Assembly: GCF_020745735.1 (NCBI RefSeq)
Contig: NC_083433.1
Coordinates: 6,459,363-6,523,362, forward strand
Length of the DNA: 64,000 nucleotides
From: Hemiscyllium ocellatum
Lineage: Eukaryota
Direction of reading: 5' to 3'
In this document: positions 1 through 64,000 of the stretch, in pieces
Position numbering within the stretch: position 1 is the first letter of the stretch
Layout: the number at the start of each line of letters is the position of its first letter
Made by a program: the position numbers and the translations under genes
The notes under the pieces: generated by a model
Told to the model about the DNA's origin: nothing
Databases searched by the model: none
The model's input: the letters and a program-made list of their open reading frames with translations, nothing else

Positions 1-135
1 CCACACCCAACCAGGGAATGACTCACCAATGATGATTGACAATCATAACAGCCAATCAGGAATCATCCATAAATCCAGACACCAATGAACGGCATGGGGT
101 GGTGTCAGATACCCAGAGCCAATCAGAGGTTTGAA
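1..135 (-). promoter_or_regulatory. Ferritin-type promoter of a further array member lying left of the window
   Basis: Aligns with the upstream regions of copies 1-8: CCACACCC at 1-8, TGACTCA at 19-25, CCAAT (+ strand) at 26, 52, 82 and 119. Confidence 0.8.
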
Positions 136-136
136 A

Positions 137-420
137 TGGCAACATAGTGGCTCAGTAGTTCACACTGCTGTCTCACAGTGCCAGGGACCTGGGCTCGATT
201 CCAACCTGGGGCAACTGTCTGTGTGGATTTCCTCTGGGTGCACCAGTTTCCTCCCACAGGCACAAAGATATGCAAATCAGGTGAATTGGCCATACTAAAC
301 TGCCAATAGTGTTAAATGTATTAGTTAGAGGGAAATGAGTTACTCTTCAGAGGGTCAGTGTGGTCTTGTTGGGCCAAAGGGCCTGTTTCCACACTGTAGG
401 GAATCTAATCTAGTCTAACC
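137..420 (+). mobile_element. tRNA-derived SINE (HE1/V-SINE-like)
   Basis: A-box-like GTGGCTCAGTAG and B-box-like GCTCGATTCC, core CCAGTTTCCTCCCACA, 3' GGGCCTGTTTCCACACTGTAGG and a (CTAAT)-like tail. Confidence 0.8.
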
Positions 421-2924
421 TGTGATTGCACTTAATTACAGAAGGTGACCGTAGGCCGACAGCAGTGTGTGGACTTAGAGCTTGCTTCTGAGATGGTGTC
501 AAGTCACTCAGTCCAAGGGCAATTAGGGATGGTCAGCACTGGTTGGCATCAACAGCAACAGCTCCATTCCATGGATTAATTTAAAAAACATACTCACTCC
601 AAGGCCATAATATGAATACAGAACACAACCCTCCAGCTGTGTGTACTCTGCACTTTATACGAATGTGACACAACCTGTACATTCCAGTCGCCTCTCCCCA
701 ACAGATGAAGACTAAAATGATGTCAGCCTTTTAAATTCAGTTTTGTTACTGATTGTGGTGTTTTAGTAGTTTCTGCACGTGGTCTCCTAACTCTCTGCTC
801 CTCTTCAGTTCTTGGCTCTTCATTATATTGAAATAAGTCTGATTTATCTAGGTCCAAAGTGCACTTTTCCTCACATCGAATTGTTGGCTAGTCTTGTCCG
901 CTTATTATATCAGTGTTCCCCACAATATTCTGCCTGTTAATGTGCGATCCAACTGAACGTAATCAGGAAGTGTGATATAGCTCTCTATTCTTTGAACTGT
1001 GTCGCCTGGAAACATATTGAAGTCTGAGATGCCTGTGGGGAAGACACAGGGACATCAAAACCGAGATAAAAAGGAGGAGGCCATTCAGCCCCTTGAGCTT
1101 ACTCTGCCATTTTATATGATCATGGTGGATCCCATCAAACCCAATAAGCCCTGATCTTGCTTCCTTGCATATTAGTCAATCCCTTTAGCCCCAAATGCTC
1201 GATCTAAATCCTTGGAGTCAAAATTCTGACCTTGACTGTATTCTGTGGTTGCAGGTCCCACAGGCTCACCACTCTCTGGGTGATGAAATGTATCAGCATG
1301 TCCACGACACCAAGTTGCAGACAAATTGCCGATCGAGGGGGAGAGTCTGATCTGTTTCAGAGAGTCTGCAGTCAGTGTGCGTTGGTTTGCTACCTGGGGT
1401 GTTAAGTATTTTGACTAATTAACATGTATTCCTGCATTTACTAGAGATTCGTGAAGGTTAGGAATTGATATGTAAAGTTAAAAGCAGCAAGGAATCCGAC
1501 GTCAACCTGGTCAGAGACTTTTCCCCAGTTAGCGTCTGCAAAAGAATTAGAACTTTTGGCAATCCAGGAAGGCTTGTGACAATCTTATGTAGAAACACCT
1601 GAATTACACACTGTCCCCCAGGCCCTTGCAGAGAGGGAGACTGAAACAGCTTTGACCCAGCCACTGAATGCAGTAACCAGTCCCTTCCTGATATTTCACT
1701 GCTTCATGATATTATAGCTGACAGTGACACAGTCCCGAAACAACAGGAATTGAGAGATTACATTTGTAGGGGAAAGAGAAAACAGATGGGTTCTGAAGGG
1801 TCACAACTTGAAATGTTTATTGAGTTTCTCTCTCCATAGATGCTGCCAGACCTGTTGAGTTTCTCCAGTAATCAGTTTTGCTTCAGATTGCCAGCATCTG
1901 CAATTCTTTAATTAGACTCACTATATGGATAGCTGAGCTATATATCCTAAAGTGTCTCAATAAAGATTGTGGTATCAAGCTCATGGCCTTATCACTAGGC
2001 TATTAATGCAGAAGCCCAGGCATGAATTCAACTATAGCAGCATGTGATTTTAATTTACTTAAAGTCTCAATTTAGTCTAATAACAATCACAAAACCACTA
2101 TCAGAAAAAAAAAAACGCCACATTATTCTCTCAATGCCTTTGGTGAAGAAAAAGTATCCATTTTGATCAGTAGAATAAAGGAGGTAGCTTGTGGGCAAAA
2201 TAGACAGAAGGCAGAACGCTTCACTACAGAGGGAGCTCACCAGCAGGAATTGTGGAAAGTTATTAAAACAAATGGAACTTTGTAAATATCACCAAAGGAG
2301 TGTTGCTGCAATTGTACAGGGTGGTGGTACAAAAGCATCAGGGATATCACTCCATACTCCGAGGGGAAATAGAGGTACTTTAAAAGGGAGATTAGCAACA
2401 GTTCACTAAATTACTGATCAGTAAGAAAAGCCTTTCATTACTATCATCTCTTGTAACTCACATTTGCAAGCAATGGCAGAAGGATGAGAGGCAATCCAAT
2501 TATTACATGATGCTCAGGGGATTGGGTGGTTAGATACAGCTGATATTTAGTCTTGCTGCTAAATCTAGGGTGAAGTCTTGTTCCTCAGATGCAGCCTAAT
2601 CTCCTGTGGTATTTCCCCCACTGCCACATGTGATCATCTGATTTCTGCAGTCCTCACCATCTCAGTTTTAAGGTAGGGTAGCAGATTTAAAAATATGGAG
2701 GAGGAGGGATTACTTCCCATAAAGAGTCATTCGCTAGCCTGGATTGCAGTGAATTTAAAGGAAGAGACATTTAGTAATGATTGACAAGTTTATGAAGAAG
2801 CATGTCCTATGGAGGGCAGGTAGGCCACCAGCATTGTACCAGACTGAGGGGACAAATTGCCACCTCCTACATACTGTCCTTACTGGGATAGGCCTATACC
2901 CAAAGCACAGCAATGTGCTTGACT

Positions 2925-3025
2925 TTATCCCCAATGAAGGGCTTTTGCCTGAAATGTCGATGTCGCTGAACTTTGGATGCTGCCTGAACTGCTGTGCTCT
3001 TCCAGCACCACTGATCCAGAATCTA
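2925..3025 (+). mobile_element. Degenerate Penelope-like pLTR fragment (family B)
   Basis: ATGAAGGGCTTTTGCCTGAAATGTCG...GATGCTGCCTGAACTGCTGTGCT matches the 3' end of the element at 50706-51934. Confidence 0.6.
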
Positions 3026-61801: not shown

Positions 61802-62853
61802 TCAGTCACTCGCCCCCAGGGTGAGCCGGTCAAACAGGTACTCTCCCAGGCCATTCTCAGGGGCTCCCAGTCTCTTCAGGTTGGTGATGTGATCTCCCAG
61901 CTTCTTGATCATCTTCACTTGCTCATCCAAGTAGTGCCTCTCCAGGAAGTCACACAGCTGGAAGGGAAAGAGAGGAAACTGATGAGGTCAAGATCAAATA
62001 TATTCTTCTCCACCAAGACTGGTAATCCCCTCTATGGGGAGTGGACAATTGAGGAAGTGGAGGCTAGTACATTTGCAACATTTAAAAGGCATTTGGATGA
62101 GTTTATGAAAAGGAAGGGTTTGGAGGGATATGGGTTGTGCTGGCAGGCAGGACTAGATTAGGATATCTAGTCAGCATGGACAGGTTGGACCAAAGGGTCT
62201 GTTTCCATGCTGTACATCTCTAGGACTCTGACAGTTAAGGGATGTCACAGATTGCTTAACAGCCTCGAGAAAGTGCTCAGATCATGACTACACCAGAAGC
62301 TTGGTCTACTTCCAGGCTACACACTACAATTTAGATACAAAAATCAGAGGCTAAAAGGCCAAGTGTCTTGGGTTAAATGGACAACAGCCCAGACATAAAT
62401 ACATCAAAAACTCACATGAGGGTCCATGTGATCAGAGGAGAGTTTGTGCAGATCCAGCAGACTCTGGTTCACATCCTTCTCCATCTGCAGAGCTCTCTGC
62501 ATTGCCTCCAGACCATTGCCCCACTCATCCTGCTCTGGCTTCTGGGAGGAGAGAGAAAGGAGAAGGGCTTCACATTCTACAGTCGCATTTGAGACACTGG
62601 GTTTAGAGAGAACTGTGGTGTCAGTTACTGTAATAAACCACAGACACTGCTATGAAGCAGCTTAATGCTCAGAATTAGTCCATCTACAATAAACATCAAA
62701 CCCAACCTTGACATCCTGCAGGAGGACTCGGCCTCCACGTTTATTCTGGAATTCCATCAGTTTCTCAGCGTGTTCCTGTTCCTCATGGGACTGCTCCTTG
62801 AAGAACTCAGCAAAGTGATGCAGGGCAACATCATCCCGGTCAAAGTAAGAGGA
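61802..62853 (-). CDS. Ferritin copy 9, partial (exons 2-4; exon 1 beyond right edge)
   Basis: Exons 62853-62707, 62541-62416, 61957-61802. Variants R46H, R60Q, G120D, T122M. AATAAA at 61690-61685. Confidence 0.93.
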
Positions 62854-62952
62854 CTGGGGGAAGGAGAGAAAAATCAAGTGTCATCTAAAGCTCCAAAAGC
62901 AATTCAAGATCTTCAATTGAAATAGTTTTCAAGTAGTCAGTCAATGTAACAG

Positions 62953-63768
62953 CCCTCTCGTTCTGGACTCCCTGACCCCAGGGAACAGACTTTGCCTGTT
63001 TATCCTATCCATGCCACTCAATTTTGTAAACCTCTAAGGTCACCCCTCAGCCTCTGACAATCCAGGGAAAACAGCCCCAGCCTGCTCAGCCTCACCTATA
63101 GCTCAAATCCTCCAACCCTGGCAACATCCTTGTAAATCTTTTCTGAACCCTTTCAAGTTTCACAACATCTTTCCAATAGGAAGGAGACCAGAATTGCACA
63201 CAATATTCCAACAGTGGCTTAACCAGTGTCCTGTACAGCCACAGGATGACCTCCCAACTCCTGTACTCAATACTCTGACCAATAAATGAAAGCATACCAA
63301 ATGCTTTCTTCACTATCCTAGTGGCCTGCGACTCCACTTCCAAGGAGCTATGAACATGCACTCCAAGGTCTGTTCAGCAACACTCCCCAGGACCTTACCA
63401 TTAAGTGTACAAGTCCTGCTAAGATTGGTTTTTCTAAAATGCAGCACCTCACATTTATCCGAATTAAACTCCATCTCACTTCACAGCCCATTTTGGTCCA
63501 GATCTTGTTGTAATCTGAGGCAACCCTCTTCACTTTCCACTACATCTCCAATTTTGGAGTCACCTGCAAACTTACAAACCATGCCTCCTTATGTTCACAT
63601 CCAAAGTCGTTTAGAAGTGAAAATGAGTGGACCCAGCACAGATTCTGGTGGCACTCCACTGGTCACAGGCCTCCAGTTTGAAAAATGACCCTTCACCACC
63701 ACACTCTTGGACCTTTGAGCCATTTCTGTATCCAAATGGTCAGTTCTCCCTGTACTCCATGAAATCTA
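62953..63768 (-). mobile_element. CR1 ORF2 fragment in intron 1 of copy 9
   Basis: Same insertion point and sequence as 56015-56829. Confidence 0.88.
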
Positions 63769-64000
63769 AGCTAGATTCAGCTCATTATTTCAGCTGAAAT
63801 TCATTGAAGCTAAAGGATTAGGTTTCATGCCGAGAATTTAGGGTCAACTTGTGTCAGAGTCTGTAGTACATCCAGCTTTCAATGGATTAAACCAAAGTGC
63901 CCTACGTTCCTTAGTAGAGGAGATTTTTCATAACAGGATAGATCTCTCCACAGTCTCTCAATGATGGGTGAGATAGTCTGACATGGTAGGGTTTACTGCC

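What the first reader, a model, noticed from the sequence alone, without database searches (positions are those of the whole stretch)
1..64000. Tandem array of at least 10 ferritin loci, with all nine visible genes intact
Seen: nine same-strand 4-exon ferritin genes at ~6-10 kb spacing, plus the promoter of a tenth at 1-135. No visible exon has a frameshift, premature stop or broken splice site, each gene has its own AATAAA, and the array runs off both edges. Known: vertebrates usually have a few dispersed intron-containing ferritin genes (H, M/L), and mammalian expansions are mostly retrocopies. Inference: a lineage-specific amplification kept intact for dosage or for tissue-specific deployment (e.g. 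erythroid, oocyte/yolk or iron-withholding immunity).
Basis: partly seen in the sequence, partly recalled or inferred. Interest (0 to 1): 0.85.

Follow-up and report, generated by a model that had tools for sequence, protein, structure and literature searches.

The report
Shark ferritin gene array, exon-homogenised
This window is a real run of ten intact-looking iron-storage (ferritin) genes in the epaulette shark. It is one slice of the huge shark ferritin gene clusters already reported in 2024, so the array is not new, but its exons are kept almost identical while the introns have diverged beyond recognition.

Summary
On the minus strand there are eight complete four-exon ferritin genes (G1-G8), a ninth with exons 2-4 only (exon 1 lies about 680 nt past the window end), and the promoter of a tenth at 1-135. 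All 35 exons are open, all introns are GT-AG, each gene has AATAAA 44-152 nt after its stop, and all ferroxidase residues are kept.

The window is Hemiscyllium ocellatum; G1 and G9 match RefSeq proteins exactly. The proteins are H/M-type and no iron-responsive element is detectable.

The array is not new. Sahm et al. 2024 (bioRxiv) reported 155 FTL plus 179 FTH1 copies in three syntenic clusters in Greenland and white sharks, with ovary-specific expression of the largest cluster. RefSeq annotates such genes in many shark orders, and this scan noted the same array in neighbouring windows.

What I add:
- Exons are 95-100% identical (mean dS 0.034), while identity falls to about 30-45% at exon borders.
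- Most intron pairs are unalignable, and intron kinship is mosaic.
- One recent unit duplication begins and ends in exon 4.

I read this as growth by unequal crossover plus gene conversion anchored in exons. Expression of individual copies could not be shown.

The parts
1..135 (-). G0: promoter only; the gene body lies left of the window
   Evidence: Aligns to the promoters of G1-G8, including three of the inverted CCAAT boxes. RefSeq places the next gene's ATG about 80 nt before position 1.
3203..6500 (-). G1: complete 4-exon ferritin gene, 173 aa, with its own divergent C-terminus and 3'UTR
   Evidence: CDS exons 6269-6168, 4371-4225, 3668-3543, 3410-3264. AATAAA at 3203. 100% identical to P0123, H. 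ocellatum 'ferritin heavy chain, oocyte isoform-like'. Promoter 6270-6500.
9573..12130 (-). G2: complete gene, 176 aa
   Evidence: CDS exons 11878-11777, 10553-10407, 10102-9977, 9823-9668. AATAAA at 9573. The whole unit is 94.5% identical to the G3 unit.
15974..18545 (-). G3: complete gene, 176 aa; recent duplicate of G2
   Evidence: CDS exons 18291-18190, 16989-16843, 16560-16435, 16281-16126. Its introns align fully to those of G2 at 90-97%.
22845..25325 (-). G4: complete gene, 176 aa
   Evidence: CDS exons 25068-24967, 24018-23872, 23552-23427, 23151-22996. 99.4% identical to P0007 of Chiloscyllium plagiosum. The 3' flank plus exon 4 is 94.7% identical to G3's, and that homology ends 6 nt into intron 3.
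30904..33480 (-). G5: complete gene, 176 aa
   Evidence: CDS exons 33229-33128, 31790-31644, 31420-31295, 31140-30985. An RNA contig joins 33128|31790 and 31644|31420 exactly at these borders. Shares only intron 2 with G7.
36808..39145 (-). G6: complete gene, 176 aa
   Evidence: CDS exons 38887-38786, 37892-37746, 37580-37455, 37007-36852. The 3' half resembles G9 (92%) and the 5' half resembles G8 (87%).
44450..46545 (-). G7: complete gene, 176 aa
   Evidence: CDS exons 46290-46189, 45480-45334, 45113-44988, 44717-44562. Two of its CCAAT boxes are mutated.
46550..54900 (.). Retroelement-filled spacer that accounts for the longest gene spacing (10.5 kb)
   Evidence: ORFs with GDSL esterase, AP-endonuclease and reverse-transcriptase matches at 48734-50712, and a weak GIY-YIG match (22.4 bits, just below Pfam's 22.6 cut-off; Penelope-type) in the ORF 50855-51667.
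54932..57975 (-). G8: complete gene, 176 aa, with an altered core promoter
   Evidence: CDS exons 57727-57626, 55911-55765, 55616-55491, 55198-55043. The stretch shared by the other copies between the TATA-like box and the ATG is replaced, and one CCAAT box is lost.
61690..64000 (-). G9: exons 2-4 only; exon 1 lies beyond the window end
   Evidence: CDS exons 62853-62707, 62541-62416, 61957-61802. 100% identical over 142 aa to P0136 (176 aa, H. ocellatum), whose gene spans 2877 nt.

Best explanation
The window is a 64-kb slice of the very large tandem clusters of H/M-type ferritin genes that sharks carry, here in the epaulette shark Hemiscyllium ocellatum.

Shown:
- There are ten same-strand units with intact coding sequence, a complete ferroxidase centre and conserved threefold-channel residues.
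- Each unit has its own promoter (four inverted CCAAT boxes and a GATAAA box) and its own short 3'UTR with a polyA signal.
- None has an iron-responsive element.
- Spacers are filled with retroelements.
- The exons of all copies are nearly identical, silent sites included. Introns, UTRs and spacers of most pairs share nothing, and the introns that are shared form a mosaic.
- One recent duplication unit begins and ends in exon 4.

Inferred:
- The array grows and shrinks by unequal crossover between the only sequences that are still homologous, the exons.
- Short gene-conversion tracts confined to those exons keep the coding sequence homogeneous within each shark lineage (concerted evolution).
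- Because there is no IRE, output is probably set by transcription and gene number and not by IRP-controlled translation.
- The most likely use is bulk ferritin supply in the ovary or oocyte, as reported for the Greenland shark. This role was not tested here.
For: - Gene models and integrity.
- Species and RefSeq identity.
- H/M type: best solved relative is bullfrog M ferritin (E = 1.5e-84), with human H chain at about 1e-80.
- No IRE: Rfam at gathering threshold and at E <= 10, plus an explicit C-bulge/CAGWGH hairpin scan, all found nothing.
- Homogenisation: mean dS is 0.034. Identity is 0.92-1.00 inside exons against about 0.1-0.65 (mostly 0.2-0.45) in the adjoining introns, with the drop at the exon border. 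25 of 36 gene pairs have no alignable intron, and sharing is mosaic: G5-G7 share intron 2 only, G6-G7 intron 3 only, G2-G4 intron 2 only. 27 of 66 pairs of informative sites fail the four-gamete test.
- Composition: GC3 is 0.66-0.69 against intron GC of 0.37-0.43.
- Recent duplication: 9646-16287 matches 16104-23157 at about 94.5%, and both ends lie at exon 4.
- Lineage-wise clustering: Heptranchias, Pristiophorus, Mustelus and the orectolobiform sequences each group together whatever their C-terminal type. A single clade of the 173-aa type is rejected (AU p = 8e-5).
- Published clusters and ovary expression.
- Spliced transcripts at the predicted junctions.
Against: - No orthologous DNA from another shark could be fetched, so concerted evolution rests on protein trees, on the within-genome contrast between exons and introns, and on a preprint's statement of synteny.
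- The RNA runs gave no cover on the copy-specific 3'UTRs of G5 and G6 or on exon 4. The tool warns that such holes prove nothing, so expression of these particular copies is unproven.
- The tissue of the RNA sample is unknown.
- dN/dS of about 0.5 is not strong constraint.
- The AU-test group was chosen after I had seen a first tree.
- G8's core promoter is altered, so not every copy need be active.
Confidence: 0.8

Rival explanations
1. The array is a young amplification private to the epaulette shark or bamboo shark lineage. The exons are alike simply because the copies are recent, and no gene conversion is needed.
For: G2 and G3 are a true recent duplicate. Their whole unit is 94.5% identical, and their dS of 0.047 matches the flank divergence.
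Against: In 25 of 36 gene pairs no intron aligns at all, although dS is 0-0.07. Identity collapses within a few bases of each exon border. The same family is amplified in six shark orders and is reported as at least 250 My old.
Confidence: 0.04
2. Exon identity, silent sites included, is held by selection on the mRNA itself (codon use, structure, translation efficiency) without any exchange between copies.
For: GC3 is 0.67 against 0.40 in introns, and the genes may be very highly expressed (high word depth on exon 2 in RNA runs).
Against: The proteins do change between shark lineages while staying uniform within each. 27 of 66 pairs of informative sites fail the four-gamete test, and intron kinship is mosaic, which points to physical exchange. 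Silent-site selection this strong is not known for vertebrate genes (general knowledge).
Confidence: 0.06
3. Most copies in this block are silent passengers. A few expressed master genes are under selection, and conversion from them keeps the rest looking intact.
For: There is no RNA cover on the G5 or G6 3'UTRs. dN/dS is about 0.5, with 23 non-synonymous against 14 synonymous variable sites. Promoter lesions occur in G8, G5 and G7.
Against: All 35 exons, all splice sites, all polyA signals and most promoter boxes are intact. Promoters and splice sites lie outside, or at the edge of, the homogenised tracts, so conversion would not maintain them. Cluster-wide ovary expression is reported in another shark. 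The RNA tool warns that holes are uninformative.
Confidence: 0.15
4. Homogenisation works through reverse-transcribed ferritin mRNA (cDNA-templated conversion), which would explain why tracts stop at exon borders.
For: Identity drops sharply exactly at exon borders. Reverse-transcriptase-bearing elements lie in the spacers. The reported expression is in the ovary, the tissue that holds the female germline.
Against: All copies keep all three introns and no intron-less copy is present. The promoter, which is not in the mRNA, is also 70-90% conserved. Non-homology of the introns alone can stop ordinary heteroduplex tracts.
Confidence: 0.04
5. The array is an assembly artefact, with haplotypes or collapsed repeats laid out as extra copies.
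For: A 155,646-nt unplaced contig carries the same proteins with almost the same spacing.
Against: Each unit has its own introns, UTRs and spacers. Contigs from other individuals match unique intron and spacer segments at single-copy-like depth.
Confidence: 0.02

Closest known systems
Shark FTH1/FTL mega-clusters (Sahm et al. 2024, bioRxiv 10.1101/2024.09.09.611499)
   Same: Both are tandem clusters of mostly full-length ferritin genes in sharks, shared across distant orders. In that paper, expression of the largest cluster is ovary-specific. The window's proteins fall in a well-supported shark-only clade together with white shark sequences.
   Different: The paper covers Greenland and white sharks in one paragraph. 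It does not mention the missing IRE, the promoter, exon-limited homogenisation or crossover anchoring in exons. The epaulette shark array is annotated in RefSeq but not discussed there. Orthology of this block to one of their three clusters was not tested.
Bullfrog M ferritin and human H ferritin (canonical vertebrate H/M subunits)
   Same: Alignment is full-length at E = 1e-80 to 1e-84. The four-exon layout with 147- and 126-nt middle exons is the same, and the ferroxidase and threefold-channel residues are all present.
   Different: There is no 5'UTR iron-responsive element, the predicted 5'UTR is only about 40 nt, and the family has tens to hundreds of copies where the canonical genes have one or a few.
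Teleost fthl27-type tandem ferritin expansion (hadal snailfish, 14 copies; eLife 2023, PMC10746142)
   Same: It is also a tandem multiplication of ferritin heavy-chain-like genes in a fish, interpreted as a dosage effect.
   Different: The teleost case is a recent expansion in a single species, expressed in most tissues and linked to oxidative stress. The shark family is far larger, old, and reported as ovary-specific in its largest cluster.
Concerted evolution confined to coding regions in tandem gene families (general knowledge; not looked up here)
   Same: Paralogues are homogeneous within a lineage, silent sites included, flanking DNA is unrelated, and the histories are reticulate.
   Different: Here the contrast is extreme: about 97% identity against unalignable sequence within a few bases of the border. 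It involves four small separate exons per gene over an array probably hundreds of genes long.

Membership tests
Ferritin (PF00210), H/M type | Full-length similarity to solved H/M ferritins | tested here: met
   P0123 (identical to G1) against the PDB: bullfrog M ferritin E = 1.5e-84 over residues 1-170; human H chain about 1e-80. PF00210 is precomputed for all relatives.
Ferritin (PF00210), H/M type | Complete ferroxidase centre (E24, Y31, E58/E59, H62, E104, Q138, counting the initial Met) and threefold-channel D128/E131 | tested here: met
   All of these residues are present in all nine copies. E24 and Y31 cannot be seen in G9 because its exon 1 is outside the window.
Vertebrate cytosolic ferritin gene | Four exons and three introns at conserved positions | tested here: met
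   Exons code 34/49/42/51 residues and all introns are GT-AG. Comparison with human FTH1 exon sizes is from memory only.
IRP/IRE-regulated ferritin | Iron-responsive element hairpin in the 5'UTR | tested here: not met
   No IRE match in Rfam at gathering threshold or at E <= 10 on either strand. No C-bulge / 5-bp stem / CAGWGH loop anywhere in the window. Transcription start sites were not mapped experimentally.
Shark amplified ferritin clusters (Sahm et al. 2024) | Tandem cluster of many full-length copies, with relatives amplified across shark orders | tested here: met
   There are ten units in 64 kb, and the array is open at both ends. The 90%-identity clusters hold 127, 69 and 180 member sequences. 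An 81-sequence shark clade has 99% support.
Shark amplified ferritin clusters (Sahm et al. 2024) | Ovary-specific expression | tested here: inconclusive
   One spliced family contig and high word depth on exon 2 were seen in an RNA sample of unknown tissue, with no cover on the G5/G6 3'UTRs.
Shark amplified ferritin clusters (Sahm et al. 2024) | Synteny with the Greenland and white shark clusters | not testable with these tools
Concertedly evolving tandem family | Silent-site identity between paralogues far above that of flanking non-coding DNA | tested here: met
   Mean dS is 0.034 against unalignable introns in 25 of 36 pairs, with a sharp fall at exon borders.
Concertedly evolving tandem family | Reticulate or mosaic history between copies | tested here: met
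   Intron sharing is mosaic and 27 of 66 site pairs fail the four-gamete test.
Concertedly evolving tandem family | Paralogues cluster by species or lineage although the duplications predate the split | tested here: inconclusive
   Proteins cluster by shark order whatever their C-terminal type, and a single clade of the 173-aa type is rejected (AU p = 8e-5). The age of the duplications rests on the preprint and on intron decay, not on orthologous DNA.

The most novel reading that the evidence does not exclude
In a ferritin array of probably hundreds of genes, as old as the shark orders, the four small exons are the only homologous DNA left. They serve both as crossover anchors that change copy number and as the sole substrate of gene conversion. 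An IRE-less, transcription- and dosage-driven ferritin supply, probably maternal and for the oocyte, is thus kept uniform within each lineage over hundreds of millions of years. This mode of evolution has not been described for these clusters.
Probability: 0.5. Interest if true: 0.55.

Novelty: already known. Interest (0 to 1): 0.4.

Why it matters
Hundreds of ferritin genes that escape IRP/IRE control are an unusual way for a vertebrate to handle iron. The block gives clean, copy-specific UTR tags for asking which copies are used, and where. It is also a compact natural example of how exchange confined to exons keeps a large gene family uniform.

The existence, size, age and ovary expression of shark ferritin clusters are already published, so the finding as stated adds a further species and not a new phenomenon.

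Tried and rejected
- **Strand:** plus-strand translation shows no ferritin; the genes are on the minus strand.
- **Non-coding RNA:** Rfam found no family at gathering threshold. At E <= 10 there were only weak miRNA-like hits in repeats.
- **Other sharks' DNA:** fetching DNA for P0007, P0123 and P0136 returned gene tables but no DNA because the files were too large. No orthologous intron comparison was therefore possible.
- **Full-length protein search:** spliced proteins have no reference, so I used the stop-free ORF around exon 2 with the region option. After that, P0123, which is identical to G1, served as the reference.
- **Copy-specific expression:** the single read-laying run gave no RNA cover on the G5/G6 3'UTRs or on exon 4. 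The tool filters human-like conserved sequence, so this is not evidence of silence.
- **Summed DNA word depth:** exons showed about 400-1650 against about 15-45 on unique parts. I did not use this as a copy number, because the tool says it is not one.
- **Literature:** searches for further shark, ovary or yolk ferritin papers found nothing beyond Sahm et al..
- **Spacer ORFs:** six of the ten large spacer ORFs had no Pfam match.
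Full report
**Observation**

A self-comparison of the window shows short blocks of 94-99% identity recurring nine times at 6-10 kb intervals, embedded in much less similar DNA. Translation shows that these blocks are ferritin exons on the minus strand.

tblastn with the four exon peptides of the first copy finds exactly 35 matches: eight sets of four and one set of three. There are no stray or damaged exons.

The spliced models are as follows:
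- G2-G8 give 176-residue open frames and G1 gives 173 residues.
- G9 has 142 residues visible, from exons 2-4.
- The exons are 102, 147, 126 and 156 nt, and every intron is GT-AG.

Each gene has AATAAA 44-152 nt after its stop. Stop-to-stop spacing is 5.9-10.5 kb.

Positions 1-135 align with the promoters of the other genes.

The one correction concerns the ninth gene. Its exon 1 is not in the window. RefSeq's model for the identical protein spans 2877 nt, which puts the ATG about 680 nt past position 64000. RefSeq also places the ATG of the tenth gene about 80 nt before position 1.

**Identity of the genome and the genes**

I searched with the stop-free ORF around exon 2, scored on the exon alone. 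This returned hundreds of shark proteins named 'ferritin heavy chain A-like', 'oocyte isoform-like', 'middle subunit-like' and similar. The closest came from Chiloscyllium and Hemiscyllium.

- G1 is 100% identical to P0123, and G9 is 100% identical over all 142 visible residues to P0136. Both are Hemiscyllium ocellatum RefSeq proteins on a 50.07-Mb chromosome of GCA_020745735.1.
- The gene tables around them list only ferritin genes, with spacing that matches my models.
- The best solved relatives are bullfrog M ferritin (E = 1.5e-84) and human H chain (about 1e-80).
- All ferroxidase-centre and threefold-channel residues are present in every copy.

**Regulation**

No iron-responsive element was found by three tests:
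- Rfam at gathering threshold.
- Rfam at E <= 10 on both strands.
- An explicit scan for a C-bulge, a 5-bp stem and a CAGWGH loop.

The nine promoters align over about 250 nt. They share four inverted CCAAT boxes, a GATAAA box about 65 nt before the ATG, and an initiator-like TCAGTTC. This predicts a 5'UTR of only about 40 nt, but the start site is an inference.

G8 has this core replaced and one CCAAT box lost. G5 and G7 also have mutated boxes.

**What is already known**

Sahm et al. 2024 (bioRxiv 10.1101/2024.09.09.611499) report the following:
- 155 FTL and 179 FTH1 copies in the Greenland shark, with about 80% of them in three clusters.
- Cluster synteny identical to the white shark.
- Duplications at least 250 My old.
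- More than 85% of copies full-length.
- Ovary-specific expression of the largest cluster.

RefSeq annotates such genes in at least six shark orders. The 90%-identity clusters hold 127, 69 and 180 member sequences.

This scan has also noted the same array in neighbouring windows, from about 45 to 190 kb beyond this one, and a second cluster about 6 Mb away. One follow-up there already reported the lack of IREs.

The array as such is therefore known. A teleost parallel also exists: 14 tandem fthl27 copies in the hadal snailfish.

**What the window adds: how the array evolves**

- **Silent sites.** Mean silent-site divergence between the nine copies is 0.034, and several pairs are at 0-0.01.
- **Exon borders.** Column-wise identity is 0.92-1.00 inside exons. 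It falls to about 0.1-0.65 (mostly 0.2-0.45), which is effectively unrelated sequence, within a few bases of every exon border and about 20 nt after the stop. The promoter holds 0.7-0.9.
- **Introns.** In 25 of 36 gene pairs no intron aligns at all.
- **Mosaic kinship.** Where introns do align, the pattern is mosaic. G5 and G7 share intron 2 only. G6 and G7 share intron 3 only. G2 and G4 share intron 2 only. G6 resembles G8 in its 5' half and G9 in its 3' half.
- **Reticulation in the coding sequence.** Of 66 pairs of informative coding sites, 27 fail the four-gamete test.
- **A true recent duplicate.** G2 and G3 are 94.5% identical across the whole unit, and their dS of 0.047 matches the flank divergence. 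This shows what an unconverted young pair looks like.
- **Crossover in exon 4.** That duplicated segment (9646-16287 against 16104-23157) starts 22 nt past one stop codon and ends 6 nt into intron 3 of the next gene. Both ends therefore lie at exon 4, which is the signature expected of unequal crossover between the exon 4 sequences of neighbouring genes.
- **Composition.** GC3 is 0.66-0.69 against 0.37-0.43 in introns. This fits GC-biased conversion but equally fits codon selection.

**Across species**

A tree of 96 proteins gives a well-supported (99%) clade of 81 shark sequences. It is separate from a clade holding chimaera and skate sequences and single shark sequences.

Inside the amplified clade, sequences group by lineage: Heptranchias, Pristiophorus, Mustelus and the Orectolobiformes. 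Two C-terminal length types (173 and 176 aa) both occur in most of these lineages. The type changes 14 times on the tree, and forcing the 173-aa type into one clade is rejected (AU p = 8e-5). The caveat is that I chose this group after seeing a first tree.

Taken with the published synteny, this is what concerted evolution predicts. Without orthologous DNA it is not proof.

**Expression and assembly**

In an RNA run of the same species, a 272-nt contig joins exon 1, exon 2 and exon 3 exactly at the predicted borders. It has three mismatches to G5, and exon 2 has very high word depth.

There is no RNA cover on exon 4 or on the copy-specific 3'UTRs of G5 and G6. The tissue of the sample is unknown.

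DNA contigs from two other individuals cover unique intron and spacer segments at about 15-45x, with a few differences. This argues against an assembly artefact.

A 155.6-kb unplaced contig repeats part of the array.

**Spacers**

The longest spacer holds ORFs with esterase, AP-endonuclease and reverse-transcriptase matches, plus a weak GIY-YIG (Penelope-type) endonuclease match just below Pfam's cut-off. Segments at about 34.1-35.7 kb and 36.3-36.5 kb are very high-copy repeats.

**Verdict**

The interpretation as a preserved amplification for dosage or tissue-specific use is reasonable, but the phenomenon is shark-wide, old and already published.

The best-supported mechanism is:
- Growth by exon-anchored unequal crossover.
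- Homogenisation by exon-limited gene conversion.
- Retroelement filling of the spacers.
- IRE-independent output driven by promoter and copy number.
- A probable use in the ovary or oocyte, which is inferred from the literature and not shown here.

Noticed in passing
window 46550-54900: The longest spacer contains a LINE-like element (GDSL esterase, AP endonuclease and start of a reverse transcriptase, 48734-50712). It is followed by an ORF with a weak GIY-YIG (Penelope-type) endonuclease match just below Pfam's cut-off (50855-51667).
   Followed up: partly
window 34090-35690 and 36290-36490: These spacer segments have summed word depths of 10^4 to 10^5 in DNA contigs and 10^2 to 10^5 in RNA contigs. 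They are very high-copy, transcribed repeats.
   Followed up: no
GCA_020745735.1, unplaced 155,646-nt contig: This contig carries the same ferritin proteins as G1-G3 and G9, with spacing identical to within 1-20 nt. It is either an uncollapsed second haplotype or a very recent large duplication of the array.
   Followed up: no
window 57728-57800 (G8 core promoter): The conserved stretch between the GATAAA box and the ATG, including the initiator-like TCAGTTC, is replaced in G8, and its third CCAAT box is lost. G5 and G7 also have mutated CCAAT boxes.
   Followed up: partly
window 12712-12791, 19129-19201, 18642-18846: Palindromic hairpins upstream of G2 and G3, within the duplicated unit, give weak sub-threshold miRNA-family hits. 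They are probably a small inverted-repeat transposon.
   Followed up: no
window 32254-32738 (intron 1 of G5): A DNA contig from another individual differs here by 14 substitutions and 4 gaps in 481 nt (about 3%), while neighbouring contigs are identical. This is either a divergent haplotype or a close paralogue elsewhere.
   Followed up: no
window 3264-3270 versus 9668-9682 and equivalents: There are two C-terminal types: G1 ends ...TLS (173 aa) and the others end ...TLGESD (176 aa). Their 3'UTRs are unrelated. Both length classes (173 and 176 aa) recur in several shark orders, with the last residue varying between lineages.
   Followed up: partly
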